A DNA stretch of 64,000 nt, taken from Heterodontus francisci (lineage: Eukaryota). How positions within the stretch are numbered: position 1 is the first letter of the stretch; each line of letters starts with the position of its first letter. Both the position numbers and the translations under genes were made by a program. This document shows, piece after piece, positions 5,024 through 61,400 of this stretch. The stretch is taken from the NCBI RefSeq assembly GCF_036365525.1, contig NW_027140453.1:124001-188000 (forward strand), in the 5' to 3' direction. The notes under the pieces were generated by a model. It saw nothing but the letters and a program-made list of their open reading frames with translations, was not told where the DNA came from and ran no database searches.

Positions 5024-5870
5024 AGGTGTGTTGCCTGATGTCTACTGCTCTGCGATGAGTTTAAATACAAGACCTGCTGCTTTGGAGGTCAGTGAGAGAC
5101 ACCATTTGAACCAGGACTGAGAGCCCAGCAAGTTTAACCAGTGCCCCCAGAACTAGGCAGTGGACATATTCAACATGGGCATGGGGAAACACAGAATCGG
5201 AGAATTTGACAGCACCGTGCAAGGCCATTCGGCCCATTGTGTCCGTACAGGCTCTTTGAATGATCAATACAGTACAATCCCAATCTCCCATTCTTTCCCA
5301 AAGCCCTTCAAATTGTTCCCCTTGCGTTATTTATCCCATTCCCTTTCAGTGTCCCTCTGACCATTCCCACCCAACGTTCATTTCCGCAGTGCTCTGAAAA
5401 TGAATCGTTAATTCCTGGAGATTGCTGGTGGCTTTCAATCCCAGTGTCAATGGAGTGGGAATGTAGCTATGATGTTGTTATTGGTCACAGTAAATATGGG
5501 ATGCGAGGGCTGTGGGAAAGAGAGGATCTAATTGTTCCCTTCCTGGAACCAAAGATAGTTTTGTATCTTATCCCAGGAAGACCTGTCCGTTATCAGATAG
5601 TCAAATGGCAGAGAGAGAGAGAGAGAGAGAACAGAAGACACAGTGAAATATAATATTCAAACAAGCTGATCCCACATCACAGTTCAGCAACAGAAGAACT
5701 CCCCAAACCCCAGTCTGAAATCAGAGTGAGTGAGGGCACCATTAACTCAGGTCTGAGTGTGGCTTGTATCTCAGTGGGAGGGTCTTGTTCCTGAGATTCA
5801 GGAGGACGTGGGGTCCAGTTCAACTCCCGAGACTGGACATCATCTATAAGGACCCCCCCAGTGTCCGTAC
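5024..5870. repeat. Higher-order repeat unique block, copy 2
   Basis: Direct near-identity to 325-1167. Confidence 0.95.
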
Positions 5871-8470: not shown

Positions 8471-9315
8471 AGTTTTGTTGCCTGATGTCTTCTGCTCTGC
8501 AAAGAGTTTAAGTACAAGACCTGCTGCTTTGGAGATCAGTGAGAGACACCATTTGAACCAGGACTGAGAGCTCAGCAAGTTTAACCAGTGCCCCCAGAAC
8601 TAGGCAGTGGACATATTCAACATGGGCATGGGGAAACACAGAATCAGAGAATTTGACAGCACCATGCAAGGCCATTCGGCCCATTGTGTCTGGACAGGCT
8701 CTTTGAATGATCAATGCAGTACAATCCCAATCTCCCATTCTTTCCCAAAGCCCTTCAAATTGTTCCCCTTGCGTTATTTATCCCATTCCCTTTCAGTGTC
8801 CCTCTGACCATTCCCACCCAACGTTCATTTCTGCAGTGCTCTGAAAATGAATCGTTAATTCCTGGAGATTGCTGGTGGCTTTCAATCCCAGTGTCAATGG
8901 AGTGGGAATGTAGCTATGACGTTGTTATTGGTCACAGTAACCATGGGATGCGAGGGCTGTGGGAAAGAGAGGATCTAATTGTTCCCTTCCTGGAACCAAA
9001 GATAGTTTTGTATCTTATCCCAGGAAGACCTGTCCGTTATCAGATAGTCAAATGGCAGAGAGAGAGAGAGAGAGAACAGAAGACACAGTGAAATATAATA
9101 TTCAAACAAGCTGATCCCACATCACAGTTCAGCGACAGAAGAACTCCCCAAACCCCAGTCTGAAATCAGAGTGAGTGAGGGCACCATTAACTCAGGTCTG
9201 AGTGTGGCTTGTATCTCAGTGGGAGGGTCTTGTTCCTGAGATTCAGGAGGACGTGGGGTCCAGTTCAACTCCCGAGACTGGACATCATCTATAAGGACCC
9301 CCCCAGTGTCCGTAC
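8471..9315. repeat. Higher-order repeat unique block, copy 3
   Basis: Direct near-identity to 325-1167. Confidence 0.95.
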
Positions 9316-17755: not shown

Positions 17756-18602
17756 AGGTGTGTTGCCTGATGTCCTGTGCTCTGCAATGAGTTTAAATAC
17801 AAGACCTGCTGCTTTGGAGGTCAGTGAGAGACACAATTTGAACCAGGACTGAGAGCTCAGCAAGTTTAACCAGTGCCCCCAGAACTAGGCAGTGGACATA
17901 TTCAACATAGGCATGGGGAAACACAGAATCGGAGAATTTGACAGCACCGTGCAAGGCCATTCGGCCCATTGTGTCTGTACTGGCTCTTTGAATGATCAAT
18001 GCAGTACAATCCCAATCTCCCATTCTTTCCCAAAACCCTGCAAATTGTTCCCCTTGCGTTATTTATCCCATTCCCTTTCAGTGTCCCTCTGACCATTCCC
18101 ACCCAACGTTCATTTCCGCAGTGCTCTGAAAATGAATCGTTAATTCCTGGAGATTGCTGGTGGCTTTCAATCCCAGTGTGAATGGAGTGGGAATGTAGCT
18201 ATGATGTTGTTATTGGTCACAGTAACCATGGGATGCGAGGGCTGTGGGAAAGAGAGGATCTAATTGTTCCCTTCCTGGAACCAAAGACAGTTTTGTATCT
18301 TATCCCAGGAAGACCTGTCCGTTATCAGATAGTCAAATGGCAGAGAGAGAGAGAGAGAGAGAACAGAAGACACAGTGAAATATAATATTCAAACAAGCTG
18401 ATCCCACATCACAGTTCAGCTACAGAAGAACTCCCCAAACCCCAGTCTGAAATCAGAGTGAGTGAGGGCACCATTAACTCAGGTCTGAGTGTGGCTTGTA
18501 TCTCAGTGGGAGGGTCTTGTTCCTGTGATTCAGGAGGACCTGGGGTCCAGTTCAACTCCTGAGACTGGACATCATCTATAAGGACCCCCCCAGTGTCCGT
18601 AC
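17756..18602. repeat. Higher-order repeat unique block, copy 4
   Basis: Direct near-identity to 325-1167. Confidence 0.95.
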
Positions 18603-20349: not shown

Positions 20350-21196
20350 AGGTTTGTTGCCTGATGTCTACTGCTCTGCAAAGAGTTTAAGTACAAGACC
20401 TGCTGCTTTGGTGGTGAGTGAGAGACACCATTTGAACCAGGACTGAGAGCTCAGCAAGTTTAACCAGTGCCCCCATAACTAGGCAGTGGACATATTCAAC
20501 ATAGGCATGGGGAAACACAGAATCGGAGAATTTGACAGCACCGTGCAAGGCCATTCGGCCCATTGTGTCTGTACAGGCTCTTTGAATGATCAATACAGTA
20601 CAATCCCAATCTCCCATTCTTTCCCAAAACCCTGCAAATTGTTCCCCTTGCGTTATTTATCCCATTCCCTTTCAGTGTCCCTCTGACCATTCCCACCCAA
20701 CGTTCATTTCCGCAGTGCTCTGAAAATGAATCGTTAATTCCTGGAGATTGCTGGTGGCTTTCAATCCCAGTGTCAATGGAGTGGGAATGTAGCTATGACG
20801 TTGTTATTGGTCACAGTTACCATGGGATGCGAGGGCTGTGGGAAAGAGAGGATCTAATTGTTCCCTTCCTGGAACCAAAGATAGTTTTGTATCTTATCCC
20901 AGGAAGACCTGTCCGTTATCAGATAGTCAAATGGCAGAGAGAGAGAGAGAGAGAACAAAAGACACAGTGAAATATAATATTCAAACAAGCTGATCCCACA
21001 TCACAGTTCAGCGACAGAAGAACTCCCCAAACCCCAGTCTGAAATCAGAGTGAGTGAGGGCACCATTAACTCAGGTCTGAGTGTGGCTTGTATCTCAGTG
21101 GGAGGGTCTTGTTCCTGTGATTCAGGAGGACGTGGGGTCCAGTTCAACTCCCGAGACTGGGCATCATCTATAAGGACCCCCCCCCAGTGTCCGTAC
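20350..21196. repeat. Higher-order repeat unique block, copy 5
   Basis: Direct near-identity to 325-1167. Confidence 0.95.
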
Positions 21197-30790: not shown

Positions 30791-30882
30791 GACGGGGTTT
30801 TCAATTTGACACTCTGCCCCTTTGCTGACCTCAGCCGTTTGTTCCCTCATTCAGGATTTGGAGTGTGCTGGAAGATCCCACA

Positions 30883-30980
30883 ATGCGGACTGTCTGCTTG
30901 TTCCTGTTGGTGCTGTTCTGGGTCCCTGAGTCAGTTGCGACTGAACTAGATAGCACTGTCTTGGCAGACATTATCCACCG
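30883..30980 (+). CDS. Secreted AID/APOBEC-like deaminase (SNAD-type), first coding exon: signal peptide
   Basis: Acceptor TTCCCTCATTCAG ends at 30854; ATG at 30883; encodes MRTVCLFLLVLFWVPESVATELDSTVLADIIH + CG, followed by the donor GTAAGT at 30981 (phase 2). Absent from the ORF track. Confidence 0.88.
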
Positions 30981-31199
30981 GTAAGTGGTCATCCTGCCCA
31001 GGCCTTTCACCATTCCCTGACAGGGTTAGGCTGTGAGAACGGCCCAGGTCTACTCTCCTGGGCTAAGGCTCCACTCTTTCACAGTGATGCGGGGGAGCAG
31101 GGCCGAGTCCAGTTAAATTAAAATAACATGGAGCTACAGAGAGGGGAAGGTGAGAGAGAAAGGACTAAGAGTGCGACAGTCACTTCATCAATAATCTGC

Positions 31200-34100
31200 C
31201 TCACTGACCCCACACACTGACCCCGCTCACTGACCCCGCTCACTGACCCCACTCACTGACCCCACTCACTGACCCCTCTCACTGACCCCACTCACTGACC
31301 CCTCTCACTGACCCCTCTCACTGAACCCACTCACTGACCCCTCTCACTGACCCCACTCACTGTCCCCTCTCACTGACCCCTCTCACTGATCCATCTCACT
31401 GACCCCACTCACTGACCCCTCTCACTGACCCCTCTCACTGACCCCACTCACTGACCCCTCTCACTGACCCCACTCACTGACCCCTCTCACTGACCCCTCT
31501 CACTGAACCCACTCACTGACCCCTCTCACTGACCCCACTCACTGTCCCCTCTCACTGACCCCACACACTGACCCCGCTCACTGACCCCTCTCACTGACCC
31601 CACTCACTGACCCCTCTCACTGACCCCACTCACTGTCCCCTCTCACTGACCCCTCTCACTGACCCCTCTCACTGTCCCCTCTCACTGACCCCTCTCACTG
31701 ATCCATCTCACTGACCCCACTCACTGACCCCTCTCACTGACCCCGCTCACTGAACCCACTCACTGTCCCCTCTCACTGACCCCTCTCACTGACCCCTCTC
31801 ACTGAACCCACTCACTGACCCCTCTCACTGACCCCACTCACTGTCCCCTCTCACTGACCCCTCTCACTGATCCATCTCACTGATCCCACTCACTGACCCC
31901 ACAAACTGACCCCTCTCACTGACCCCGCTCACTGACCCCACTCACTGACCCCGCTCACTGACCCCACTCACTGACCCCTCTCACTGACCCCTCTCACTGA
32001 CCCCACTCACTGACCCCTCTCACTGACCCCTCTCACTGACCCCACACACTGACCCCGCTCACTGACCCCTCTCACTGACCCCACTCACTGACCTCTCTCA
32101 CTGACCCCATTCACTGACCCCTCTCACTGACCCCACTCACTGTCCCCTCTCACTGACCCCTCTCACTGACCCCTCTCACTGTCCCCTCTCACTGACCCCT
32201 CTCACTGATCCATCTCACTGACCCCACTCACTGACCCCTCTCACTGACCCCGCTCACTGAACCCACTCACTGTCCCCTCTCACTGACCCCACTCACTGAT
32301 CCATCTCACTGACCCCACTCACTGACCCCACAAACTGACCCCTCTCACTGACCCCACTCACTGACCCCACTCACTGACCCCTCTCACTGACCCCACTCAC
32401 TGAGCCCACTCACTGACCCCTCTCACTGAACACACTCACTGACCCCTCTCACTGACCCCTCTCACTGAACCCACTCACTGACCCCTCTCACTGACCCCAC
32501 TCACTGTCCCCTCTCACTGACCCCACTCACTGACCCCTCTCACTGATCCATCTCACTGACCCCTCTCACTGACCCCACTCACTGACCCCACAAACTGACC
32601 CCTCTCACTGACCCCGCTCACTGACCCCACTCACTGACCCCTCTCACTGACCCCTCTCACTGACCCCTCTCACTGACCCCGCTCACTGACCCCGCTCACT
32701 GACCCCACTCACTGACCCCACAAACTGACCCCGCTCACTGACCCCGCTCACTGACCCCACTCACTGACCCCTCTCACTGACCCCACTCACTGACCCCTCT
32801 CACTGACCCCTCTCACTGACCCCACTCACTGTCCCCTCTCACTGACCCCTCTCACTGACCCCTCTCACTGATCCATCTCACTGACCCCTCTCACTGACCC
32901 CACTCACTGACCCCACAAACTGACCCCTCTCACTGACCCCGCTCACTGACCCCACTCACTGACCCCTCTCACTGACCCCTCTCACTGACCCCGCTCACTG
33001 ACCCCACTCACTGACCCCTCTCACTGACCCCTCTCACTGACCCCTCTCACTGACCCCTCTCACTGACCCCACTCACTGACCCCACTCACTGACCCCTCTC
33101 ACTGATCCATCTCACTGACCCCTCTCACTGACCCCACTCACTGACCCCACAAACTGACCCCTCTCACTGACCCCGCTCACTGACCCCACTCACTGACCCC
33201 ACTCACTGACCCCTCTCACTGACCCCTCTCACTGACCCCTCTCACTGACCCCTCTCACTGACCCCTCTCACTGAACCCACTCACTGTCCCCTCTCACTGA
33301 ACCCACTCACTGATCCATCTCACTGACCCCACTCACTGACCCCACAAACTGACCCCTCTCACTGACCCCACTCACTGACCCCACTTACTGACCCCACTCA
33401 CTGACCCCTCTCACTGACCCCACTCACTGACCCCTCTCACTGACCCCACTCACTGACCCCACTCACTGACCCCACTCACTGACCCCACTCACTGACCCCT
33501 CTCACTGGCCCCACTCACTGGCCCCACTCACTGTCCCCTCTCACTGACCCCACTCACTGACCCCTCTCACTGACCCCTCTCACTGACCCCTCTCACTGAC
33601 CCCACTCACTGACCCCTCTCACTGACCCCTCTCACTGAGCCCACTCACTGAGCCCATTCACTGACCCCTCTCACTGACCCCTCTCACTGACCCCTCTCAC
33701 TGACCCCTCTCACTGGCCCCTCTCACTGGCCCCACTCACTGTCCCCACTCACTGACTCCACTCACTGACCCCTCTCACAGACTCCGCTCACTGACCCCTC
33801 TCACTGACCCCTCTCACTGACCCCGCTCACTGACCCCACTCACTGACCCCACTCACTGACCCCACTCACTGACCCCACTCACTGACCCCACTCACTGACC
33901 CCTCTCACTGACCCCACTCACTGACCCCTCTCACTGGCCCCTCTCACTGGCCCCACTCACTGACCCCACTCACTGACCCCTCTCACTGACCCCACTCACT
34001 GGCCCCACTCACTGTCCCCTCTCACTGACCCCTCTCACTGACCCCACTCACTGACCCCTCTCACTGACCCCTCTCACTGACCCCTCTCACTGACCCCTCT

Positions 34101-35005
34101 CACTGACCCCACTCACTGACCCCTCTCACTGACCCCTCTCACTGAGCCCACTCACTGAGCCCATTCACTGACCCCTCTCACTGACCCCTCTCACTGACCC
34201 CTCTCACTGGCCCCTCTCACTGGCCCCACTCACTGTCCCCACTCACTGACTCCACTCACTGACCCCTCTCACAGACTCCGCTCACTGACCCCTCTCACTG
34301 ACCCCTCTCACTGACCCCGCTCACTGACCCCACTCACTGACCCCACTCACTGACCCCTCTCACTGACCCCTCTCACTGACCCCACTCACTGACCCCACTC
34401 ACTGATCCCGCTCACTGACCCCGCTCACTGACCCCGCTCACTGACCTCTGTTACTGACACCACTTACTGACCCCACTCACCGACCCCACTCACCGACCCA
34501 CTCACCGATCCCTCTCCCCGACCCCTCTCACTGGCCCCACTCACTGGCCCCACTCACTGACCCCACTCACTGACCCCTCTGACTGACCCTGCTCACTGAC
34601 CCCACTCACTGACTCCACTCACTGACCCCGCACACTGACTCCACTCACTGACCCCACTTACTGACCCCTCTCACTGAAACCACTCACTGACCCCTCTCAC
34701 TGACTCCGCTCGCTGACCCGGCTCACAGACCCCTTTCACTGATACCACTCACTGACCCCTCTCACTGACCCCGCTCACTGACCCCTCTCACTGACCCCGC
34801 TCACTGACCCCTCTCACTGACCCCTCTCACTGACCCCTCTCACTGACCCCGCTCACTGACCCCGCTCACTGTCCCCTCTCACTGTCCCCTCTCACTGTCC
34901 CCTCTCACTGTCCCCTCTCACTGACCCCACTCACTGTCCCCTCTCACTGACCCCCTCACTGACCCCGCTCACTGACCGCACGCACAGACCCCGCTCACTG
35001 ACCTC
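31200..35005. repeat. 13-bp minisatellite (CTCACTGACCCC[T/A/G]) filling the deaminase gene intron
   Basis: Directly visible ~3.8-kb tandem array. Confidence 0.97.
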
Positions 35006-35009
35006 GCTC

Positions 35010-35462
35010 CTCTCCGCCTGTCTCTCTCTCTCTCCCTGTTGCTCTGTGTCTTTCTCTCTTTCTCTCTCTCTCTGTCTTCTGTTCTATTTATCTTTTTGTG
35101 TCTGTTTCTATTAATCTGTCACTCTCTTTCTCCTCTGTCTCTCTCCCTGCTCGACTGCCTGTCTATCTCTCTCTCCCTCTATCTCTATCACTTTATCCTT
35201 TTTCAGTTTATCACTGCCTCTGTTCCCTCTCTCTGCTTCTATCTGTATCTGTCTCCATCTTGTTCTTCCTTTCTCTGTCTCTATCTGTTTCTGTCTCCAC
35301 AACTCTTCCTTTCTCTGGCTTTGTTTCTATCTCACTATCTCTGTCTCTTCTGCTCTCTTCTACCCTCCCTCTATCACATTCTCTGTCTCCCTCCCTCCAT
35401 CCATCTCTCCACCTCTTTGTTTCTCCCTTGCTCTTGTTCCCATCCCTCTTTCCATCTCTGTT
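35010..35462. repeat. CT-rich low-complexity tract
   Basis: Imperfect (CT)n. Confidence 0.9.
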
Positions 35463-35539
35463 TCATTGGAAGGAGTTCATTCGGTCCCGTCCTTTCCAAT
35501 GTCGGAAATTAATGACCAAAATTATTGAAATGCCACAGC

Positions 35540-35665
35540 ATACAAGACTACGGGCCAAGTGCTGGGAAATAGGATTAGAATAGTTAGGTGCTTGATGGCC
35601 GGCACAGACACGATGGGCCGAAGGGCCTGTTTCTGTGCTGTGTAACTCTTTGACTCTCTGACTCA
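35540..35665 (+). mobile_element. CR1 LINE 3' end
   Basis: GATGGGCCGAAGGGCCTGTTTCTGTGCTGT followed by an (ACTCTNTG)n tail. Confidence 0.8.
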
Positions 35666-35817
35666 AACTCCCAGTTTCCCTCCTTCCACCATGAGGTCTG
35701 GTATTAAATAGGCAGGTTCTGGTCTGTGACCATAATCCACATCATACTGACCTGGCACAGGTCGAATTTCATTCACAATTCCTACCTTGACTCTCACTTT
35801 GTGTTTGTCCCTTTCAG

Positions 35818-36460
35818 ATTCCGACAAGTGTCTGGCCAGCAGCCCAGCAGTACGAGTGGGGGAGGACAGTTCACCTTCCTGATGGTGTTAACTCCTCAAC
35901 AATGCACCGGTGCCAATATCAATCAGAATGTACAATTCAGACCCTCTGATTCAGGAAGACCGGTTATTGGCGGCGGTGTGAATTACTTCCTCAACCGTCG
36001 ATCAGTAAACTACATCGCAGTTTACCCCAACACAGGAAGTCGCTGCTCAGAGAATAAACTGTTACACTTCACTCAGGAGGATCAACGCTATGGGCAGACT
36101 GACAGTGCAGCTCGGCTGCTTCAGAATAGCATCAATAACCAGGGGCTGCAGGTTGGCTGTGTCATTCTCTACACCACCTACACCCCCTGCATCCAGAGCT
36201 GCTTCAGTGGCAATGAGAATTGTGACATCCTCGGCCCCTTAGGCAGCGCACCCTTTAGTACCACCTGGGACAACACAAACATTCATAAGTATTTTGTCTT
36301 CAGCAAATTATACCCACTCGACAATAATGCAGATAAGATCCCCACAGTCCAAGGCAAGCTGGGACAAGTTACCCAGGCACGCTTTCACATCAGAAAGTGT
36401 GATGGGGCCAACAACCAAATACAGTGTCAGGACTGCAGCAGCCCTAGGTACTGTATCTAG
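35818..36460 (+). CDS. Secreted AID/APOBEC-like deaminase (SNAD-type), catalytic exon; full protein 246 aa
   Basis: Acceptor TTTGTGTTTGTCCCTTTCAG ends at 35817 and joins in frame (CG+A = Arg). Motifs QFTFLMVLTPQQC, IAVYP, RCSENKLL, CVILYTTYTPCIQSC, KYFVFSKLYPLD and a C-terminal RKC..C..C..C follow the SNAD deaminase layout. TAG at 36458-36460. Confidence 0.88.
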
Positions 36461-38200: not shown

Positions 38201-38509
38201 GTCTCACTGCAGTTACTGTTCCCTCTCACCATCTTAAATCCTTAAAAAAATTAAACACCTCCATTAGATTCCCCTGTCAATATTCTCATGTCGGGACTGC
38301 AAGCCTTGTCTATGCAACATTTCTTCATAATTTAGCAGACTGGATGCTGGTGAAGTTAATGCATGGTTTCGGTTCTGGGAGCTGTGTCACTTTATTGCTG
38401 CTGGCTGAGCTTCTGAATTATAAATAGACAAGCTTGGAAATAGTTAACAGATCAGACAGCCTCTGTGGGGAGAGAAAAGAAGTTAACATCATCAGCGAGA
38501 GAGGGACCA

Positions 38510-40680
38510 ATAACTGCAGTGAGATCGAGACACCAGCAGATGGAGATGGTGAGAGGGGGAGTAACTGCAGTGAGACAGGGTCACCAGTAGATGGAGATGG
38601 TGAGAAGTGGGGACATTAGCTGCAGTGAGAGAGGGACATCAGCAGATGGAGATGGTGGGAGGGGGACAGTAACTGCAGTGAGAGAGGGACACCAGCAGAT
38701 GGAGATGGCGAGAGGGGGAGTAACTGCAGTGAGGCAGGGACACCAGCAGATGGAGATGGTGGGAGGGGGAGTAACTGCAGTGAGAGAGGGACACCAGCTG
38801 ATGGAGATGGTGGGAGGGGGACAGTAACTGCAGTGAGAGAGGGACACCAGCAGATGGAGATAGCGAGAGGGGGAGTAACTGCAGTGAGGCAGGGACACCA
38901 GCAGATGGAGATGGTGGGAGGGGGAGTAACTGCAGTGAGAGAGGGACACCAGCAGATGGAGATGGTGGGAGGGGGACAGTAACTGCAGTGAGAGAGGGAC
39001 ACCAGCAGATGGAGATAGCGAGAGGGGGAGTAACTGCAGTGAGGCAGGGACACCAGCAGATGGAGATGGTGGGAGGGGGAGTAACTGCAGTGAGAGAGGG
39101 ACACCAGCAGATGGAGATGGTGAGAGGGGGAGTAACTGCAGTGAGACAGGGTCACCAGCAGATGGAGGTGGTCAGAGGGGAGACAGTAACTGCAGTGAGA
39201 GAGGGACACCAGCAGATGAAGATGGTGGGAGGGGGACAGTAACTGCAGTGAGAGAGTGTCACCAGTAGATGGAGATGGTGAGAGGGGGGCAGTGACTGCA
39301 GTGAGAGAGGGACACCAGCAGATGGAGATGGTGGGAGGGGGACAGTAACTGCAGTGAGAGTGTCACTAGCAGATGGAGGTGGTCAGAGGGGAGACAGTAA
39401 CTGCAGTGAGAGAGGGACACCAGCAGATGAAGATGGTGGGAGGGGGACAGTAACTGCAGTGAGAGAGGGACACCAGCAGATGGAGATGGTCAGAGGGAGG
39501 CAGTGACTGCAGTGAGAGAGGGACACCAGCAGATGGAGAAGGTGGGAGGGGGACAGTAACTGCAGTGAGAGAGTGTCACCAGCAGATGGAGATGGTGAGA
39601 GGGGGAGTAACTGCAGTGACGCAGATGGAGATGGTCAGAGGGGTGACAGTAACTGCAGTGAGAGAGGGTCACCAGCAGATGGAGATGGTGAGAGGGGGGC
39701 AGTGACTGCAGTGAGAGAGGGACACCAGCAGATGGAGATGGTCAGAGGGGGGCAGTGACTGCAGTGAGAGAGGGACACCAGCAGATGGAGATGGTGGGAG
39801 GGGGACAGTAACTGCAGCGAGAGAGTGTCACCAGCAGATGGGGATGGTGAGAGGGGGAGTAACTGCAGTGACGCAGATGGAGATGGTCAGAGGGGTGACA
39901 GCAACTGCAGTGAGAGAGGGTCACCAGCAGATGGAGATGGTGAGAGGGGGGCAGTGACTGCATTGAGAGAGGGACACCAGCAGATGGAGATGGTCAGAGG
40001 GGGGCAGTGACTGCAGTGAGAGAGGGACACCAGCAGATGGAGATGGTCAGAGGGGGGCAGTGACTGCAGTGAGAGAGGGACACCAGCAGATGGAGATGGT
40101 GGGAGGGGGACAGTAACTGCAGCGAGAGAGTGTCACCAGCAGATGGGGATGGTGAGAGGGGGAGTAACTGCAGTGACGCAGATGGAGATGGTCAGAGGGG
40201 TGACAGCAACTGCAGTGAGAGAGGGTCACCAGCAGATGGAGATGGTGAGAGGGGGGCAGTGACTGCATTGAGAGAGGGACACCAGCAGATGGAGATGGTC
40301 AGAGGGGGGCAGTGACTGCAGTGAGAGAGGGACACCAGCAGATGGAGATGGTGGGAGGGGGACAGTAACTGCAGTGAGAGAGGGTCACCAGTAGATGGAG
40401 ATGGTGAGAGGGGGCAGTGACTGCATTGAGACAGGGACACCAGCAGATGGAGATGGTCAGAGGGGGGCAGTGACTGCAGTGAGAGAGGGACACCAGCAGA
40501 TGGAGATGGTCAGAGGGGGGCAGTGACTGCATTGAGAGAGGGACACCAGCAGATGGAGATGGTCAGAGGGGGGCAGTGACTGCAGTGAGAGAGGGACACC
40601 AGCAGATGGAGATGGTGGGAGGGGGACAGTAACTGCAGTGAGACAGGGTCACCAGCAGATGGAGATGGTGAGAGGGGCAG
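38510..40680. repeat. ~51-54-bp minisatellite (AACTGCAGTGAGAGAGGGACACCAGCAGATGGAGATGGTGGGAGGGGG[AC]AGT)
   Basis: Directly visible; 17-aa periodicity in the ORFs. Confidence 0.95.
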
Positions 40681-40684
40681 TATG

Positions 40685-41190
40685 CCATCCAGTTCTGGTC
40701 ACCACACTTTAGGAAGGATGAGTGTCTTTGACACGCTGCAGAGGAGATTTACCAGAATGGTTCCAGGGATGCTACACGGTTAGATTGGAGAATATGGGGT
40801 GGTTTACATTTGAGCAAAGGCGATTGAGGGGAGATCGGATAGAGGAGTACAAGATTGTGACAGTGTTAGATAAAGTAGACAGAGTAAACCTGTTCCCATT
40901 AGTGGATGGTGCAAGGAATATTGGTCACAGATTGATGATTTTGGACAATAGATACTGGGGTATTTGAGGAAGAACCTCTATACACAGTGAGTGGTAATAA
41001 CCGGGAATTCACTGCCTACCAGGGTGGTGGAAGTGGAGACAATGAATGATTTCAAAAGGAAATTGAATGGACACTTGAAGGAGATAATCTTGCTGGGCCG
41101 CAGGGATAGAGAGGTAGAATGGGACTGACTGGATTGCATGGACTCGATGGGCAGAATGGCCTCCTTCTGTACCATACTGGCTGTATGACT
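40685..41190 (+). mobile_element. CR1 LINE 3' fragment
   Basis: QFWSP, RRLRGDxIExYKI and CR1 3'-tail motifs. Confidence 0.85.
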
Positions 41191-41340
41191 TTCTGGCTAA
41201 CTGGCTGTAAAGTGTTTTCAGATAAAATGGTGTTGCAAAGGTCACCAATAGGGATACAAAGGGGCTCGATGGTTTGCTGAGCTTTCACGATGATGCTGCT
41301 CACAGCTGGGTGTTTTAGGGGCAGGTTGGGAGAGTGAGGA

Positions 41341-41379
41341 TGTTTTTGTCTCACTCTGCCGCAGGATTGTATCGCTGTG
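41341..41379 (-). promoter_or_regulatory. 23-bp-spacer recombination signal sequence
   Basis: CACAGCG + 23 nt + ACAAAAACA immediately 3' of YYCAASM. Confidence 0.92.
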
Positions 41380-42005
41380 CCCATACTCGCTGCACAGTAG
41401 TAGGTCGCAGTGTCTGTCGGCTGGGGGTCGCCCAGCTGTAGGGAGAATCGGTTGCTTGCAGAGTCGTGTTGCACAGTGAACCGCTTCCCAAAGCCTGGCC
41501 CACAGCTGCCGTGCTCATTGCACATCCACTCTACTGCCTTCCCCTCCTGCCTCTACCAGTGCATGGTGTAGCTGCCCATGCTGGCTCCCTCCAAGCTGCA
41601 GCCGAGGGCGAGGGGCTTCCCCGGTCGAATAGAAGCCGCGGCTGGAGTCTGGACCACAGTGGGTGCAGACTGAACCCCTGGAACACATTCCATAAAAGAA
41701 AGTAATTCAGACTCATGGAAGGAAAATGGTAGCATAAATCATAAAATCTAGCAGAATAGAAAGAGGCCGTTCTGCCCATCGTATCTGCGCTGGCTGTTTG
41801 AAAGAGCTATCGAGTTAGTCTCACTTGCCCCTGCTCCTACCCCATTGCCCTCCCAATTTCCCCGCTCCAAGCCCTGATCCAATAGCCATTTGGGAGATTA
41901 CTATTGAATCTACTTCCTCCTGCTGAAGGGATAGCACTTACAAAAAATCCAATGTCCAAGCAATAAGATGACCAAGATAGAGACGTTTTTAGCTAAGAGT
42001 GCCAT
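41380..42005 (-). pseudogene. T-cell receptor V segment (delta/alpha-type, TRDV2-like) with intact leader and one in-frame stop
   Basis: Leader exon 42005-41942 (MALLAKNVSILVILLLGHWIF, GTAAGT donor, phase 1). V exon 41677-41380 reads VQSAPTVVQTP..LGCSLEGASMGSYTMHW*RQEGKAVEWMCNEHGSCGPGFGKRF..FSLQLGDPQPTDTATYYCAAS, with TAG at 41553-41555 in place of the Tyr of WYRQ. Confidence 0.9.
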
Positions 42006-51737: not shown

Positions 51738-54700
51738 ATGTGGACTCGGCTGATCATTCTGGGTTACCTGAGTGAGTAACTTTCATTCTCGACAAAGTTC
51801 ACCCCCAGTACAACTAGAACAAGCTGTGTTTATTCAAACCGTTACATAGAATAATCTCCCAAGATGTTGCACAGAAATCTGATTGAAGAAATGTCTGACA
51901 CACGGCAGGGAAGGAGATGATTGGAGGGCTGACTGTTAGTTTAAAAGAGCAGACGGAGGTGGAGAGGCAGAAAGGTTTAGGAGGCTAGATATCTTGAAGC
52001 CACATCAGACACTGCTGGAGGAAAGGGAGTGGAGGGAATTTATACAGGAGGCTTGGGTCAGAGAAACAGAGAGTTGGTGAAGATTACAGAAATGAGGTGG
52101 GAGAGGGCGGGAGAGGTCATGAAAGAATTTGAACAGGAAGACGGAAGTTGTACATCAAAGGCGTTTGCAGCTGTGAACCAATGTAGGTCAGAGAGCACAG
52201 GGGTGATGTGTGACTTAAACTTTCTGCAAGATAACATACAACAGCAGTGTGTTGGAGGAGACCTGACTTCTGGAAAGTGGAAGCTGGGAGGCTGGCCAGG
52301 TGTGGATTAGAAGATTTGATTCTCTAGAAGGTCGAGGGTTTTTGGTAGAGGATTGGCTGAGGCAAAATCAGTGATGGTGGATATTACGGAGGTTGTAATT
52401 GGATGTCCTTGTGATGAGGAGGCTACAGTGAAGGAAGCTGGGCACAGTCGGAAGCTGATGAGAAATTGGAGAGGGACAAGATAGATTCTCGGGGTACCCT
52501 AGAGGTAACAGTGCTGGAGTGGGTAGGGAAGACACTGCAGGAGATTCTCTGGCTGAGACGAGACTGGGTTGAGTGGAAATAGGCCAGAGCAGTTCCACCC
52601 AGCTGGACATGGAAGGAGAGGTGTTGGCAGAGGGTAATGTGGTGAATTGTGTCAAAGACTGCCGACAATTCGAGAAGGATGATCAGAAACAGTATTCCTG
52701 ACTTGGCTCTTGCAGCTTCACCGCTGCTCAAACCCTTTACCAGTTCTTTGGTAACTCTAGACTTGACTATTCCAAAGATCTCCTGGCTGATCTCTCACAT
52801 TCCACCTTCTGTACATTTTGGTCATCCAGTATGATACTGCCCAAGTCCCGTTCACCTTTCATCTCCGTGCTCACTGACCTACACTGGCTCCCGGTTCAGC
52901 AAGGCCTGGATTTCAATATTCTCACAATCGTTTCCAGATCCTTCTATCACCTAGCCGTTCCCTACTTCTGAAATCATCTCCAGCCCCACAACCCTTGGAG
53001 ATCTCTGCGCTCCTCTAATTCAGGCCTCTTGAATATTCCCGATTCGAATCCCTTCCACCATTGGCAGCTGTGCCTTCACCTGCCGAGGCTTAACGCTATG
53101 GAATTCTAGCCCTCAACTTCTCTGTCTCTCCTCCTCTCTTTCATCCTTTCAGACACTCCTTAAAACCTACCTCTTTGACAGAGCATTTGGCCACCTGCCC
53201 GACCAGCTGCTTCTGTGGATCGGTGTCAGTTCGGGATGGTAACACACCGATGAAGTGCTTTGGGACATTTTATTACATCAAAGGCAGTACATAAACGCAG
53301 GTTGTTGTTGGTTTTGAGACTACACGTTCCCTCTGCAGGACCCACCAGTCACACTGGGTCGCTTGTGCTCCACCTGGCAGTTCTCGCTCCTCCTCCACTT
53401 TACATCTTTCCTACTGGGATGAAGTGAAGCTGAGATATTTACTGCTTTCTGTTACCTGAGAGCTGGTGGTTAATCTAGAATAGGGAGGACTGTCTGTGAG
53501 CAGTGAGTTAGAGGGGGAGGCTGAGCTGGGAGACAGATGGAAATCCAGTTTAGAGAAGGAGGACATTTCCCAGCTTTAATCTGGGGGGTTTTGACCAGGG
53601 CAGAGGGTGAAACTGAGATTATTGGTATTTCGGGAGGGTACAAGGCGCTGTGTAACATTAACTGTACTTTATATTAACATTAAACATCTTTCTGTCACTC
53701 AGTCACAGACTCCACACTCACTGACCCGTGTGTAAATCACACAGTCCTGGACCAGCCCTGGAGGAGCATCGATTGTGATGTCACTGTGGGCTCCGGTCAG
53801 GAGAAGTGTGATGATAATCTTGCTCAAGGATGGTACAGATTTAAAAGGTAATGTAAAGGAACAAATTCTGGGTAAATCAGTTAATGAGGGAGGAGTAATG
53901 GATTTCCCCCAGTTTCTGGCACTATCTGTTGTTACCAGTCTCTCTAACAGTTAATATTTACCATCAGTTCAGGGACTGACTCTGTGATTATTGTTTCAGT
54001 TCTGGTGGATGGAAGATTCCGGACACTGTTGTCCCAGATTTTCACTGCTCCACACGTGCCACAGGCTGGTTACAGGGTAATTTCCGTCTTAAAAATATCA
54101 GATTTACATTCACTGTCCAGCACTGTTCACGTGGGTTACCTTCTTCAATATTCATAAACTCTCATTTCAGGTTCCCATCCCAGTGTGGGACAGGGGGAAG
54201 TAACGAGGACAGTTTGTTTTAACAAGGCTGGAAATCGCTGTCACTGGACCCAGGAAATAAAGATCAAAAACTGCAGCAGTTATTTTGTTTATGAGTTGAA
54301 GCCTCCACCCGACTGTAACGCTGTTTATTGTACAGGTAGATTGCTGTTTGTATATGGTGCAGATGGGTGATTCTGGGATGTCCCGTGTCTCCCATGGGAA
54401 TGAGACAGTTTACTCACTGCCCTCCTTTTTGTAAGGGACACAGTGAATATAGGATCTGTAAAACAGAGTGAACTCTTCACTAAAACTCTAGGGAACTGAA
54501 CCAGACGCTCGCTGTCTGGAGAGAGGGCTGGCATGTCTGGGTAGTATTCTGTCAGGTCTGCAATTGAGGAGATTCAGGTTTTCTGGTGAGTGTCAGACAC
54601 AGCAGCAGGATCCTGACAGACTCTATGTGAAGGGCAAACACTCTCACCTCACCTCTTGAGTTCAGCTCTTTTGTCCATGTTTGAACCACACTGTAATGAG

Positions 54701-57700
54701 GTCAGGAGCTGAGTGACCCTGGCGGAACCCAAACTGACCATCACTGAACAGGTAATTGCTGAGCAAGTGCCGCTTGATAGCACTGTCAACGACACCTTCC
54801 ATCATTTTACTGATGATAGAGAGTAGACTGATGGGACGGTAATTGGGTGGCTTGAACTTGCCCTGCTTTGACTTGTCCTGCTTTTTATGCACAGGACATG
54901 CCTGGGCAGTTTTCCACATTGCAGGGTAGATGCCAGTGTTGTAGCTGTACTGGAACAGCTTGGCTAAGGATGCAACAAGTTCTGGAGCACAGGTCTTCAG
55001 TACTACTTCCGGGATATTGTCAGGGCCCATAGCCTTTGCAGTATCCAGTGCCTTCAGTCATTTCTTGATATCAAGCGGAGTGAATCGAATTGGCTGAAGA
55101 CTGACATCTGTGATGCTGGGGATTGCAGGAGAAGGTCGAGATGGATAATCAACTCAGCACTTCTGGCTGAAGATTTTTGCAAATGCTTCAGCCTTATCTT
55201 TTGCACTGATGTGCTGGGCTCCCTGATCATTGAGGATGGGGATATTTGTGGGGCCACCTCCTCCAGTTAGTTGTTTAATTGTCTACTGCCATTCACGACT
55301 GGATGTGGCAGGACAAGAAATACTGGAATCACTCAGCGGGTCTGGCAGCATCTGTGGAAAGAGAAGCAAAGTTAACGTTTCGGGTCAGCGACCCTTCTTC
55401 GGAACTCATTTGATCCGTTGGTTATGGGATCGCTTAGCTCTGTCCATCGCATGCTAATTATGCTGTTTGGCATGCAGATAGTCCTGTGTTGTAGCTTCAC
55501 CAGGCTGACACCTCATTTTGAGGTATGCCTTGTGCTGCACTTTACATGCCCTCCTGCATTCTTCATGGAACCAGGTTTGGTCTCCTGGCTTGATGGTCAT
55601 GATCGAGTGGGGGATATACCGGACCATGAGGTTACAGATTGTAGTTGAGTACAATTCTGCTGCTGCTGTTGTTCCCACAGCACCTCATGGATGCCCATTG
55701 TTGCATTGCTAGACTTGTTTGAATCTATCCCATTTAGCATGGTGATAGTGTCACACAACACGATGGACGGTATCCTCAATGGATCCTCAAGGACTGTGCG
55801 GTGGTCACTCCCACCAAGACTGTCATGGACAGATGGATATGTGGCAGGCAGATTGGTGAGGATGAAGTCAAGTATATTTTCTCCTCTTGTTGGTTCTGTC
55901 ATCACCTACCGCAGTCCCAGACTAGCAGCTTTGTCTTTTAGGACACGGCTAGCTCGGTAAGGAGTGGGCTGCAGTGACTGAGAGGAGTGGTCTGCAGAGA
56001 CTGAGGGGAGTGGGATGTAGTGACTGAGCGAATGAGATGCGGTGACTAGGTGGAGTAGGATACAGTGAATGTGGGGAGTGGGATGTAGTGACTGAGGGGA
56101 GTGGGATGTAGTGACTGAGGGGAGTGGGATGTAGTGACTGAGGAGAGTGGGGTGTAGTGACTGAGGAGAGTGGGGTGTAGTGACAGGGGAGTGGGAGGTA
56201 GTGACTGAGGGGTGTGGGATGCAGTGATTGAGCGGAGTGGGAAGTAGCGACTGAGGGGAGTGGGATACAGAGACTGAGGGGAGTGGGATACAGTGACTGA
56301 GCGAATGAGATGTGGTGACTAGGTGGAGTAGGATACAGTGAATGTGGGGAGTGGGATGTAGTGACTGAGGGGAGTGGGATGTAGTGACTGAGGGGAGTGG
56401 GATGTAGTGACTGAGGAGAGTGGGATGTAGTGACTGAGGAGAGTGGGGTGTAGTGACTGAGGAGAGTGGGGTGTAGTGACAGGGGTGTGGGAAGTAGCGA
56501 CTGAGGGGAGTGGGATACAGAGACTGAGGGGAGTGGGATACAGTGACTGACGGGAGTGGGATGTAGTGACTAAGGGGAGTGGGATGCTGTAATTGAGGGA
56601 AGTGGGATGTAGTGACTACTGAGTGTGATGTGGTAACTGAGGGGAGTAGGATGTAGAGAAGCGGGGAGTGAGGTGCAGTGACTGAAGGGAATGGTATAGA
56701 GTGATTCGGTGGAGTGGGTACAGTGACATAGAGAAGTGGGATGCAGTGATTGAGGGGAGTTGGATGCAGTAATTGAGGGGAGTGGGATGCAGCGACTAAG
56801 GGGAGAGGGATGCAGTGACTGAGGGCAGTGAGATGTAGTGACTGAGGGGAGTGGGATGTAGTGACTGAGGGGAGTGGGATGTAGTGACTGATGGGAGTGG
56901 GTGCACTGACTGAGGGGAGTGGGTGCAGTGAGTGAGGGGAGTGGGATGCTGTAATTGAGGGAAGTGGGTGTAGTGACTGAGGGGAGTGGCATGCAGTGAC
57001 TCAGGGGAGTGTGATTCAGTGACTGTGGGGATTGGGATACAGTGACTGTGGGGAGTGGGATACAGTGACTGAGGAGAGTGTGATACGGTAACTGAGGGGA
57101 GTGTGATCCCTTCCATTTATCATCACATCCTCCCCGGTTTCACTTGTCACTAGAACTTTTCCCAGTTCTGATGTAAGGTCACATATTAACATTAAACATC
57201 TTTCTGTCACTCAGTCACAGACTCTGCACTCACTGACCCGTGTGTAAATCACACAGTCCTGGACCAGCCCTGGAGGAGCAGCGATTGTGATGTCACTGGG
57301 TGCTCCGGTCAGGAGAAGTGTGATGATAATCTTGCTCAAGGATGGTACAGATTTAAAAGGTAATGTAAAGGAACAATTTCAGGGTAATCTAGTCAATATG
57401 GGCAGAGTAAGGGATTTCCCCCAGCTTCTGGTACTATCTGCTGGTACCAGTCTCTCTAACAGTTAATATTTGCCATCAGTTCAGGGACTGACTCTGTGAT
57501 TTTTGTTTCAGTTCTGGTGGATGGAAGATTCCGGAGACTGCTGTCCCAGATTTTCACTGCTCCACACATGTTACAGGCTGGTTAAATGGTAATTTCAGCC
57601 TTGAGAATATCAGATTTACATTCACTGTCCAGCACTGTTCACATGGGTTACAGTCTTCAATATTTATAAACTCTCATTTCAGGTTCCCATCCCAGCGTGG

Positions 57701-58429: not shown

Positions 58430-61400
58430 TTACTGAGGGAAGTGGGATGGAGTGACTGCGGGAAGTGGAAGGGAGTGAATGAGGGAAGTTGGATGGAGTG
58501 ACTGAGGGGAGTGGGATGGGGTGACTGAGGGAAGTGGGATGGAGTGACTGAGGTGAGTGGGATGGGGTGACTGAGGGGAGAGGGATGTGGTGACTGAGGG
58601 GACTGGGATGGAGTGACTAAGGAGAGTGGGATGATGTAATTGAGGGGAGTGGAATACATAGACTGAGGGGAGTGGGATGTAGTGACTGAGGGGAGTGGGA
58701 TGTAGTGACTGAGAGGAGTGGGATGCACTGACTGAGGGGAGTGGGATGCAGTGACGGAGGGGAATGGGATGCAGTGGACTGAGGGCAGTGGGATGCAGTA
58801 ATTGAGGGGAGTGGGATGTAGTGACGGAAGGGAGTGGGATGCAGAGGCTGAGGGGATTGGGATGCAGTGACTGGGGAGTGGAATGCACTGATTGAGGGGT
58901 GTGGGATGCAGTGACTGAGAGGAGTGGGATGCAGTGACTGAGGGGAATGGGATGCAGTGACTGAGGGGAATGGGATGCACTGATTGAGGGGAGTGAGATG
59001 CAGTGACTGAGAGGAGTGGGATACAGTGGCTGAGGGGAGTGGGATGGGGTGACTGAGGGGAGTGGGATGTGGTGATTGAGGGGAGTGGGATGCAGTGACT
59101 GAGGGCAGTGGGATGCAGTGACTGAGGGCAGTGGGATGCAGTGACTGAGGGGAGTGGGATGATGTAATTGAGCGGAGTGGGATGTGGTGATTGAGGGGAG
59201 TGGGATGTAGTGACTGAGGGGAGTGGGATGTAGTGACTGAGAGGAGTGGGATGCACTGACTGAGGGGAGTGGGATGCAGTGACGGAGGGGAATGGGATGC
59301 AGTGGACTGAGGGCAGTGGGATGCAGTAATTGAGGGGAGTGGGATGTAGTGACGGAAGGGAGTGGGATGCAGAGGCTGAGGGGATTGGGATGCAGTGACT
59401 GGGGAGTGGAATGCACTGATTGAGGGGTGTGGGATGCAGTGACTGAGAGGAGTGGGATGCAGTGACTGAGGGGAATGGGATGCAGTGACTGAGGGGAATG
59501 GGATGCACTGATTGAGGGGAGTGAGATGCAGTGACTGAGAGGAGTGGGATACAGTGGCTGAGGGGAGTGGGATGGGGTGACTGAGGGGAGTGGGATGTGG
59601 TGATTGAGGGGAGTGGGATGCAGTGACTGAGGGCAGTGGGATGCAGTGACTGAGGGCAGTGGGATGCAGTGACTGAGGGGAGTGGGATGATGTAATTGAG
59701 CGGAGTGGGATGCAGTAATTGAGGGAAGTGGGATGTAGAGACTGAGTGGAGTGGAATGCACTGATTGAGGGGTGTGGGATGCACCGATTGAGGGGAGTGG
59801 GATGCAGTGCCTGAGAGGAGTGGGATGCAGTGGCTGAGGGGAGCGGGTTGCAGTGACTGAGAGGAGTGGGATGCACTGATTGAGGGGAGAGGGATGCAGT
59901 GACTGAGAGGAGTAGGATGCAGTGACTGAGGGGAGTGGGATGTGGTGACTGAGGAGAGTGGGATGCAGTGACTGAGAGGAATGGGATGGAGGGACTGAGG
60001 GGAGTGGCATGATGTAATTGAGGGGAGTGGGATGCAGTGATTGAGGGGAGTGGGATGATGTAATTGAGGGGAGTGGGATGCAGTGATTGAGGGGAGTGGG
60101 ATGATGTAATTGAGTGGTGTGGGATGTCGTGACATGGGCAGTGCGATGCATGGACTGAGTGGAGTGGGATGCAGTGACTGAGGGAAGTGGGATGCAGTGA
60201 CTGAGGGGTGTGGGATGTAGAGACTTAGGGGAGTGGGATGTAGAGACTGTGGGGAGTTGAATGTGGTGACTGAGGGGAGTGGGATGGGGTGACTGAGGGG
60301 AGTGGGATGTAGAGTCTGAGGGGAGTGGGATGTAGTGACTGAGGGGAGTGGGATGCAGTGACTGAGGGGAGTTAGATGCAGTGACTGAGGGGAGTGGGAT
60401 GATGTAATTAAGGGGAGTGGGATTAAGTGACTGAGGGGAGTGGGATGCAGTGACTGAGGGGAGTTAGATGCAGTGACTGAGGGGAGTGGGATGATGTAAT
60501 TAAGGGGAGTGGGATTGTGACTGAGGGGAGTGGGATGCATTGACTAAGGGGACTGGGAAGTAATGATTGAGGGCAGTGGGAAGAAGTGATTAGGGGAGTG
60601 GCATGTAGTGGGTGAAGGGAGTGGGAAGTAGTGAGTGAGGGGAGTGGCATGTAGTGAGTGAGGGGAGTGGGATGTAGAGACTGAGAGGAGTGGGATGCAG
60701 TGACTGAGGGGAGTGGGATGTAATGACTGAGGGGAGTGCGATGTAGAGACTGAGGGGAGTGGGATGTACTGGCTGAGGGGAGTGGGATGTAGTGACTGAG
60801 GGGAGTGGGATGCAGTGACTGAGGGGAGTGGGATGCAGTGACTGAGGGGAGTGGGATGTAATGACTGAGGGGAGTGCGATGTTGAGACTGAGGGGAGTGG
60901 GATGTAGAAACTGAGGGGAGTGCGATGTAGAGACTGAGGGGAGTGGGATGTAGTGGCTGAGGGGAGTGGGATGTAGTGACTGAGGGGAGTGGGATGCAGT
61001 GACTGAGGGGAGTTGGATGCCGTGACTGAGGGGAGTGGGATGGAGAGACTGAGAGGAGTGGGATGTAGTGAATGAGGGGAGTTGGATGCCGTGAATGAGG
61101 GGAATGGGATGTAGAGACTGAGGGGAGTGCGATGTAGAGACTGAGGGGAGTTGGATGCCGTGACCGAGGGGAGTGAGATGTAGAGACTGAGAGGAGTGGG
61201 ATGAGGTGACTGAGGGGAGTGGGATACAGCGTCTGAGGGTAGTATGATACAGTGACTGAGGGGTGTGATACAGTCACTCAGGGAGTGTGATACAGTGACT
61301 GAGGGGAGTGTGATACATTGTCTGAGGGTAGTATGATGCAGTCACTGAGGGGAGTGTGATACAGCGACTGAGGGTAGTGTGATACAGTGTCTGAGGGGGA

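What the first reader, a model, noticed from the sequence alone, without database searches (positions are those of the whole stretch)
30883..36460. Secreted AID/APOBEC-like (SNAD-type) deaminase with a Cys-x-Glu zinc motif instead of His-x-Glu
Seen: a signal-peptide exon hidden 4.8 kb upstream, across a 13-bp satellite intron, splices in frame to the 35818-36460 exon, giving an intact 246-aa protein. It has C109-S-E111 (TGC TCA GAG, 36044-36052) and TPC157xxxC161. Known: SNAD (secreted novel AID/APOBEC-like deaminase) proteins have a signal peptide, HxE plus (S)PCxxxC and a Cys-rich tail, whereas CxE with three-Cys zinc ligation is characteristic of tetrameric cytidine deaminases. A His codon (CAY) needs two changes to become TGC, so a single base-call error is unlikely. 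Inference: this is a chondrichthyan secreted deaminase that keeps the catalytic Glu but uses a three-Cys site. Alternatively, the Cys is disulfide-bonded in the extracellular space and the protein is a non-catalytic binder. Either case would be an unusual extracellular immune effector.
Basis: partly seen in the sequence, partly recalled or inferred. Interest (0 to 1): 0.88.

Follow-up and report, generated by a model that had tools for sequence, protein, structure and literature searches.

The report
Ordinary shark SNAD1 secreted deaminase gene
This is an intact two-exon horn-shark gene for a secreted AID/APOBEC-like deaminase of the known SNAD1 family, and its Cys-x-Glu zinc motif is the normal state of every functional-looking SNAD1 protein I could find, from sharks to salamanders.

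Summary
Exon 1 (30883-30980) and exon 2 (35818-36460) join in frame across an intron filled by a 13-bp satellite. TGC-TCA-GAG lies at 36044-36052 and TPCxxxC at 36182-36202.

The gene is a SNAD1 family member (Pfam PF18744, 50.8 bits against a cut-off of 25). It equals an annotated Heterodontus francisci "uncharacterized protein" that contains the same junction. An AlphaFold model (pLDDT 86) matches only AID/APOBEC3 structures (Z 8.8).

The interpretation that Cys-x-Glu departs from a SNAD His-x-Glu norm is not supported. In 43 SNAD1 sequences the column is Cys in 42, Ser in one degenerate chimaera copy and His in none. These come from eight shark genera, coelacanth, bowfin, gar, sturgeons, a sucker, an arowana and salamanders. 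The Glu is invariant.

So the three-Cys site is family-wide and conserved. It is neither shark-specific nor copy-specific. The published texts I could read describe His-x-Glu and do not mention it.

SNAD1 proteins were already reported in shark plasma. This scan flagged other SNAD copies in the same genome, and one was followed up. Transcription of this exact copy and its junction were not shown directly. dN/dS and zinc-site geometry could not be computed. Interest is low to moderate.

The parts
30855..30882 (+). 5' part of the first in-window exon (leader), after a splice acceptor at 30854/30855. RefSeq model P0001 reads it as coding (..RIWSVLEDPT) from an upstream exon that I did not find in the window.
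   Evidence: tblastn of the P0001 N-terminus; acceptor CATTCAG|GATTTGG; no upstream-exon peptide in any frame.
30883..30980 (+). Coding exon 1: Met, signal peptide and the start of helix 1 (MRTVCLFLLVLFWVPESVA|TELDSTVLADIIH + 2 nt of an Arg codon). Donor is CG|GTAAGT.
   Evidence: identical in P0001.
30883..30939 (+). Predicted signal peptide (19 aa): n-region MR, h-region TVCLFLLVLFWV (Kyte-Doolittle mean 3.1), c-region PESVA with Ser at -3 and Ala at -1.
   Evidence: By von Heijne's rules, because SignalP was not available. The same layout appears in homologues.
30981..35817 (+). Intron, 4837 bp, phase 2.
   Evidence: In run X3 depth is zero at 35693-35809 and starts in the bin 35810-35848.
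31200..35003 (.). 13-bp satellite CTCACTGACCCCT, 293 copies, 89% matches, filling most of the intron.
35818..36460 (+). Coding exon 2: the whole deaminase domain (213 aa) plus the stop codon TAG at 36458-36460.
   Evidence: Pfam SNAD1 E 2.7e-13; AF2 model pLDDT 86.
36044..36052 (+). C-S-E motif (TGC TCA GAG) at the start of helix 2: first zinc-ligand position plus the catalytic Glu.
   Evidence: column Cys in 42/43 and Glu in 43/43; helix 77-82 in the model.
36182..36202 (+). T-P-C-I-Q-S-C just after strand 3: second zinc motif (PCxxxC).
   Evidence: P and first C in 42/42, second C in 41/41.
36230..36283 (+). Variable segment between the PCxxxC region and strand 4 (exon-2 residues 138-155, the loop-7 equivalent), with conserved PF..W. 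It differs from paralogue P0002 at 10 of 18 residues, whereas residues 61-138 are identical.
   Evidence: Equating it with loop 7 is an inference from the model's order of elements.
36398..36454 (+). C-terminal four-Cys cluster (C194, C203-x-x-C206, C212 in exon-2 numbering) on the strand 5/6 hairpin, the SNAD1/2 hallmark.
   Evidence: near-invariant; strands 190-197 and 200-205 in the model; described in PMC5889660.
36960..36965 (+). First AATAAA downstream of the stop; candidate polyadenylation signal (inference only).
   Evidence: RNA-like coverage runs at least to 36580.

Best explanation
[quoted passage not shown] Shown: two coding exons, a 19-residue signal peptide, and an AID/APOBEC-type deaminase fold. 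The fold carries the SNAD1-specific helical insert, the strand 5/6 hairpin and the four-Cys cluster. The motif C-x-E ... P-C-x-x-x-C is conserved in all functional-looking family members retrieved. Inferred mechanism: after signal-peptide cleavage the protein is secreted into plasma. A zinc ion held by Cys109, Cys157 and Cys161 activates water. Glu111 shuttles the proton, and the enzyme deaminates cytosine in single-stranded nucleic acid. The remaining conserved Cys form stabilising disulfides. The variable loop between PCxxxC and strand 4 sets target preference and differs between paralogues. The Cys in place of His is the ancestral, family-wide state of SNAD1, not a peculiarity of this gene. 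My odds: SNAD1 member with a family-typical motif 0.93; catalytically active zinc deaminase about 0.55; substrate is nucleic-acid cytosine about 0.4.
For: Pfam SNAD1 scores 50.8 bits against a cut-off of 25, and all 22 aligned relatives hit the same model. The locus is 100% identical to annotated P0001, junction included. The AF2 model has pLDDT 86 and pTM 0.87. The top 49 Foldseek hits and top 50 VIA hits are all AID/APOBEC3 (best E 3.6e-3; Z 8.8, 146 residues aligned, rmsd 4.0). Invariant columns are C76, E78, C114, P123, C124, C194 and C203 against a mean column identity of 26%. The column tally over 43 sequences is, and the taxa are. The three Heterodontus copies form one clade with 100/99 support. 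In run X3 coverage is confined to exon 2, with zero depth in the intron just upstream. A loose end at 35818 reads TGTCTCACA, which fits the paralogues' exon-1 end ..IVSQ. Two SNAD1 proteins were found in nurse-shark plasma by LC-MS/MS (PMC9207270).
Against: No SNAD has a demonstrated activity (PMC8201067). A thiolate-only zinc site is unusual for a protein that folds in the oxidising secretory pathway. [quoted passage not shown] Zinc-site geometry could not be measured because model coordinates are not exposed. The junction 30980/35818 of this exact copy was not seen in reads. The copy-specific segment 36239-36277 had no depth in X3. X1 held all sampled words of the exon but laid nothing on it, and its RNA label is a guess. 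The sequence profile found no solved deaminase.
Confidence: 0.9

Rival explanations
1. Non-catalytic secreted binder (pseudo-deaminase). In the extracellular space two of the three motif cysteines are disulfide-bonded, no zinc is held, and the protein only binds nucleic acid or another ligand.
For: The protein enters the oxidising secretory pathway (signal peptide). After the three motif Cys, the mature protein has seven others, an odd number that leaves one unpaired. Inactive AAD domains that keep their motifs are known (APOBEC3 N-terminal domains, cited in PMC5889660). Krishnan et al. tie activity to a conserved His.
Against: Glu78 is invariant in 43/43 sequences, together with C76, P123-C124 and C128, across lineages that split over 400 My ago, while the mean column identity is 26%. 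A purely structural disulfide would not need the Glu or the Pro. Copies that look decayed lose these residues (Callorhinchus P0021, gar P0025).
Confidence: 0.2
2. Active zinc deaminase, but acting on free nucleosides, nucleotides or another small molecule rather than polynucleotide, as the Cys3 enzymes cytidine deaminase and blasticidin-S deaminase do.
For: The Cys3 ligand set is typical of those small-molecule deaminases (established knowledge; CxE is listed as a superfamily variant in PMC5889660). Loss of the His removes a base-stacking contact used by AADs.
Against: The fold belongs to the helix-4 (AID/APOBEC/TadA) division: helix 174-186 lies between strands 156-163 and 190-197. All best structural matches are APOBEC3/AID, none CDA. 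A near-invariant aromatic residue (W150, 41/43) sits in the loop-7-equivalent, as in nucleic-acid AADs. The paralogues differ in loops, which fits sequence-context recognition.
Confidence: 0.12
3. A copy-specific oddity, sequencing error or decaying pseudogene in which His was lost.
Against: The frame is intact and the splice sites are canonical. The motif is the same in two paralogues and in 39 other sequences. A contig with zero differences covers 36004-36067 at high depth. The protein is identical to the RefSeq model.
Confidence: 0.02

Closest known systems
SNAD1 (Pfam PF18744; Krishnan et al. 2018, PMC5889660), including the two SNAD1 proteins detected in nurse-shark plasma (PMC9207270)
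   Same: [quoted passage not shown] PCxxxC motif.
   Different: Nothing that defines the family. This copy has its own loop-7-like segment (STTWDNTNIH against SHPWAGPQVQ in its closest paralogue). It lacks the long Cys-rich C-terminal repeats of the coelacanth, bowfin, gar, sturgeon and sucker proteins.
Classical AID/APOBEC deaminases (AID, APOBEC3A/B/G/H)
   Same: Best structural matches (Z 8.0-8.8 over about 145 residues), helix-4 topology, Glu in the first turn of helix 2, PCx(2-4)C after strand 3, aromatic residue in the loop before strand 4.
   Different: They are intracellular and use His-x-Glu. The spacing from Glu to Pro is 23-28 residues there against 44 here. They have helices 5 and 6, no disulfide cluster, and about 10-13% identity.
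Tetrameric cytidine deaminase and blasticidin-S deaminase (CDD-like, Cys3 zinc site)
   Same: Cys-x-Glu plus PCxxC gives three thiolate zinc ligands.
   Different: They belong to the C-terminal-hairpin division (strands 4 and 5 adjacent, no helix 4), are cytosolic, act on free nucleosides or antibiotics, and have an Arg at +3 of the first Cys (recalled knowledge). Here there is a helix-4 topology, no CDA among the best structural matches, and mostly Lys at +4 (33/43).

Membership tests
SNAD1 (PF18744) | Match to the family profile above its curated cut-off | tested here: met
   50.8 bits against 25, E 2.7e-13, profile positions 14-200 of 213.
SNAD1 (PF18744) | N-terminal signal peptide | tested here: met
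   MR + 12 hydrophobic residues + PESVA|TE, with the same layout in homologues. Judged by rules only, because SignalP was not available. Orthologues were found in shark plasma (PMC9207270).
SNAD1 (PF18744) | AID/APOBEC-like deaminase fold (helix-4 division) | tested here: met
   AF2 pLDDT 86; all top Foldseek and VIA matches are AID/APOBEC3, Z 8.8; helix 174-186 lies between strands 4 and 5.
SNAD1 (PF18744) | [quoted passage not shown] | tested here: met
   Helices 26-29, 34-37 and 55-58 lie between strands 19-24 and 65-68 in the model.
SNAD1 (PF18744) | New strands 6/7 instead of helices 5/6, with a four-Cys cluster (C at the end of strand 5, CxxC in strand 6, a last C) | tested here: met
   Strands 190-197 and 200-205, no C-terminal helices. 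C194, C203, C206 and C212 are near-invariant. Strand 7 is not assigned by DSSP.
SNAD1 (PF18744) | Two zinc-chelating motifs, [H/C]xE and PCxnC | tested here: met
   C76-S-E78 and P123-C124-x3-C128. The first ligand is Cys, as in 42/43 relatives.
SNAD1 (PF18744) | Zinc binding and deaminase activity | not testable with these tools
   No coordinates from the model, and no activity reported for any SNAD.
Tetrameric cytidine deaminase (CDD-like) | C-terminal hairpin topology: strands 4 and 5 adjacent without helix 4 | tested here: not met
   Helix 174-186 separates strands 156-163 and 190-197. No CDA among the top structural matches.
Classical AID/APOBEC | H-x-E-x(23-28)-P-C-x(2-4)-C and intracellular location | tested here: not met
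   Cys instead of His, 44 residues between Glu and Pro, and a signal peptide.

The most novel reading that the evidence does not exclude
SNAD1 as a whole would be the one AID/APOBEC-like clade with an obligatory all-cysteine zinc site, contrary to the His-x-Glu description in the published texts I could read. The ligand switch would be an adaptation to secretion. For example, the enzyme could be redox-latent: disulfide-locked and zinc-free in plasma, then becoming an active mutator once it reaches a reducing compartment of an infected cell or parasite.
Probability: 0.1. Interest if true: 0.7.

Novelty: new member of a known kind. Interest (0 to 1): 0.3.

Why it matters
For this locus, little: it is an already predicted gene of a described family, in a lineage where the family has been reported at the protein level. 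The useful by-product concerns the family. Every functional-looking SNAD1 I retrieved has Cys-x-Glu. [quoted passage not shown] Anyone planning the first biochemical test of a SNAD should therefore expect a Cys3 zinc site in a secreted, disulfide-rich protein. They should control redox conditions and not assume APOBEC-like base stacking.

Tried and rejected
- **Paralogue DNA and dN/dS.** I had no paralogue DNA, so there is no dN/dS and no DNA-level check of the paralogue junction.
- **Read laying across the intron.** As the tool advised, I laid the part beside it.
- **Run X1.** It held all sampled words of the exon but gave no contig on it. This is unexplained; the tool warns that a filter drops records.
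- **Sequence searches against solved structures.** The family profile found only a spurious pilin match. The core segment alone gave a non-significant ADAT2 hit, E 0.8, whose PCxxC did align with TPCIQS.
- **Further homologue searches.** The family-profile search and the search with the sucker protein added few sequences. I did not retrieve zebrafish or carp SNAD1, or any SNAD2-4.
- **Supplements.** Those of PMC5889660 are not held, and those of PMC11004436 hold no alignment. I could not see whether their figures show Cys at this column.
- **Upstream exon.** The upstream coding exon of RefSeq model P0001 was not found in the window.
- **Joined protein.** The exons were handled by reference, and the database protein P0001 served for the junction.
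- **Complex prediction and the protein atlas.** Neither was used, because no binding claim is made and the family is known.
Full report
**Observation**

- ATG at 30883 opens a 98-nt coding exon that ends CACCG|GTAAGT at 30980.
- After a pyrimidine tract, CAG|A at 35817/35818 opens the second exon.
- The split codon CG+A gives Arg, and the frame runs to TAG at 36458-36460, so the model is 33 + 213 = 246 residues.
- TGC TCA GAG occupies 36044-36052. ACC CCC TGC ATC CAG AGC TGC occupies 36182-36202.
- The intron is dominated by a 13-bp satellite (CTCACTGACCCCT, 293 copies, 31200-35003).
- The exon-2 ORF has no in-frame ATG upstream of the acceptor. The frame upstream of 30883 has stops unless an acceptor at 30854/30855 is used.
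The exons were handled by reference.

**Identity of the gene**

Exon 2 alone hits Pfam SNAD1 (PF18744) at 50.8 bits against a cut-off of 25, covering profile positions 14-200 of 213.

The best database match, P0001, is an "uncharacterized protein" of Heterodontus francisci. It is 100% identical and contains the junction ...ADIIHRFRQVSG.... The genome is therefore horn shark, and the two-exon join is already in a public gene model.

That model carries 28 extra N-terminal residues from an upstream exon that I could not find in the window. The paralogues P0002 and P0003 start at the Met used here.

The N-terminus has the form of a signal peptide (MR, a 12-residue hydrophobic core, PESVA|TE), as in relatives. 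This was judged by rule, not by SignalP.

**Fold**

An AlphaFold2 model of exon 2, built with a 22-sequence alignment, has pLDDT 86 and pTM 0.87.
- Foldseek's first 49 PDB matches are all APOBEC3 or AID (best E 3.6e-3).
- VIA-align gives Z 8.8 with 146 residues aligned at 4.0 Å, and again only AID/APOBEC3 in the top 50.

The order of elements is the one Krishnan et al. describe for SNAD1:

| Element | Exon-2 residues |
|---|---|
| Strand 1 | 19-24 |
| Short helices (the SNAD1/2 insert) | 26-29, 34-37, 55-58 |
| Strand 2 | 65-68 |
| Helix 2, starting at C76-S-E78 | 77-82 |
| Strand 3, followed by PCxxxC | 114-121 |
| Strand 4 | 156-163 |
| Helix 4 | 174-186 |
| Strand 5 | 190-197 |
| Strand 6 | 200-205 |

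The four-Cys cluster is C194, C203, C206 and C212. Helix 4 between strands 4 and 5 excludes the CDD-like (tetrameric cytidine deaminase) topology.

Sequence-only searches of solved structures did not reach a deaminase. Placing C76 at the His position therefore rests on topology and on the invariant Glu, not on a residue-level alignment.

**The Cys-x-Glu question**

An exhaustive HMMER search found 22 cluster representatives. With cluster members and one more search I had 43 sequences. Their sources were:
- eight shark genera: Heterodontus (three copies), Pristiophorus, Stegostoma, Carcharodon, Mustelus, Heptranchias, Scyliorhinus;
- a chimaera (Callorhinchus);
- coelacanth, bowfin, gar, sturgeons, a sucker, an arowana and two salamanders;
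- several unnamed assemblies.

All 22 aligned members hit PF18744. The coelacanth protein XP_014353512 is one of the SNAD1 sequences analysed in PMC11004436.

In a MAFFT alignment:
- the column of C76 is Cys in 42, Ser in 1 and His in 0;
- E78 is 43/43;
- P123-C124 is 42/42, and C128 is 41/41.

The single Ser is the chimaera copy, which has also lost strand 3 and PCxxxC and looks degenerate. Mean column identity is only 26%, so these residues are under strong constraint.

Cys-x-Glu is thus the family norm across jawed vertebrates. It is not a shark-specific or copy-specific change.

**What the literature says**

SNAD1 was defined by Krishnan et al. 2018. [quoted passage not shown]

Majewska et al. 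2024 describe the SNAD1 centre as two Cys, one His and an HxE Glu.

In the texts available to me, no paper says that SNAD1 uses Cys. Figures and the SI alignments were not readable.

Nurse-shark plasma contains two SNAD1 proteins by LC-MS/MS (PMC9207270). No catalytic activity has been reported for any SNAD.

**Paralogues**

The three horn-shark proteins form one clade with 100/99 support, a species-level expansion. Sharks hold at least two older SNAD1 lineages.

Against its closest paralogue P0002, this copy is identical over exon-2 residues 61-138 and differs at 24 of 75 residues after that. Ten of the 18 residues in the loop before strand 4 differ.

This mosaic fits either gene conversion of the 5' part or local diversification of a substrate loop.

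**Transcription**

Three small runs of one sample hold parts of the exon. One holds all sampled words, but their RNA label is a guess.

In run X3:
- depth is zero at 35693-35809 and starts in the bin that contains the acceptor;
- a loose end at 35818 reads TGTCTCACA. This matches the end of the paralogues' exon 1 (..I-V-S-Q), not this copy's (..I-I-H-R);
- a contig without differences covers 36004-36067, the CSE codons;
- the copy-specific segment 36239-36277 had no depth.

So the homologous splice is used in at least one paralogue. Transcription of this exact copy, and its own junction, are not shown directly.

**Mechanism and odds**

Most likely this is a secreted zinc deaminase.
- Cys109, Cys157 and Cys161 hold the metal.
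- Glu111 acts as the proton shuttle.
- The other conserved Cys form disulfides.
- The variable loop sets target preference.
- The probable substrate is cytosine in single-stranded nucleic acid.

The fold, motif conservation and secretion signal are shown. Zinc binding, activity and substrate are inferred.

The main rival is a disulfide-locked, non-catalytic binder (0.2). A small-molecule deaminase is possible (0.12). An error or a pseudogene is excluded for practical purposes.

**Context and verdict**

The gene lies between very large satellite arrays and next to an Ig V-set segment on the other strand. Other readers of this scan flagged SNAD genes inside TCR V arrays elsewhere in this genome. 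One follow-up reached the same view of the family.

This is an ordinary new member of a known family. The only point of wider interest is that this state is not reflected in the published descriptions I could read.

Noticed in passing
window 35999-36460 (exon-2 residues 61-213) against P0002: Mosaic identity between paralogues. Residues 61-138 are 100% identical, then 24 of 75 residues differ, concentrated in the loop before strand 4. This suggests gene conversion of the 5' part or focused diversification.
   Followed up: partly
window 30855-30882 and upstream: RefSeq model P0001 adds 28 N-terminal residues (MEKQNQ...) that would bury the signal peptide. The exon that encodes them is not in the window in any frame, and the paralogue models start at the Met of 30883. 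A Stegostoma isoform (P0005) has a similar extension.
   Followed up: partly
window 1168-28804; 38497-40677; 55961-57107; 58432-63979: The gene is flanked by huge satellites: a 33-bp unit over 27.6 kb upstream, a 53/106-bp unit downstream, and a 23-bp unit at the window's end. The 23-bp unit resembles the 33-bp unit loosely in reverse orientation, and the intronic 13-bp unit shares ACTGACCC(C)TCT with it.
   Followed up: partly
window 41052-41525 (-): An ORF with an immunoglobulin V-set match (E 5.4e-06) on the strand opposite to the deaminase gene. It fits the scan's notes of TCR-like V segments beside SNAD genes in this genome.
   Followed up: partly
window 35537-35653 (intron): A short stretch covered at very high depth in all three runs by contigs with many different flanks: a dispersed repeat, possibly transcribed.
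   Followed up: no
window 957-1067, 5660-5770, 9105-9215, 18392-18502, 20984-21094: Five copies that translate to the same 38-residue stretch interrupt the 33-bp satellite array. They turned up as identical weak tblastn hits and look like a repeated insertion or a higher-order repeat.
   Followed up: no
window 54662-55030 (-): Fragment with a weak reverse-transcriptase (RVT_1) match, just below the Pfam cut-off (28 against 29.6 bits): a retroelement remnant.
   Followed up: no
P0014/P0037 (Xyrauchen texanus) against P0038 (Acipenser ruthenus): The SNAD1 proteins of the sucker, a teleost, are 76% identical to a sterlet protein and nest inside the sturgeon clade (95/88 support), while gar is only 53% identical. 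This conflicts with the species tree and suggests contamination or transfer. Two Acipenser sinensis entries in these clusters are flagged UNVERIFIED_CONTAM.
   Followed up: no
P0021 (Callorhinchus milii) and P0025 (Lepisosteus oculatus): Degenerate family members. The chimaera protein has S-A-E and lacks strand 3 and PCxxxC. One gar protein lacks the second Cys of PCxxxC. They are likely inactive copies or faulty gene models.
   Followed up: no
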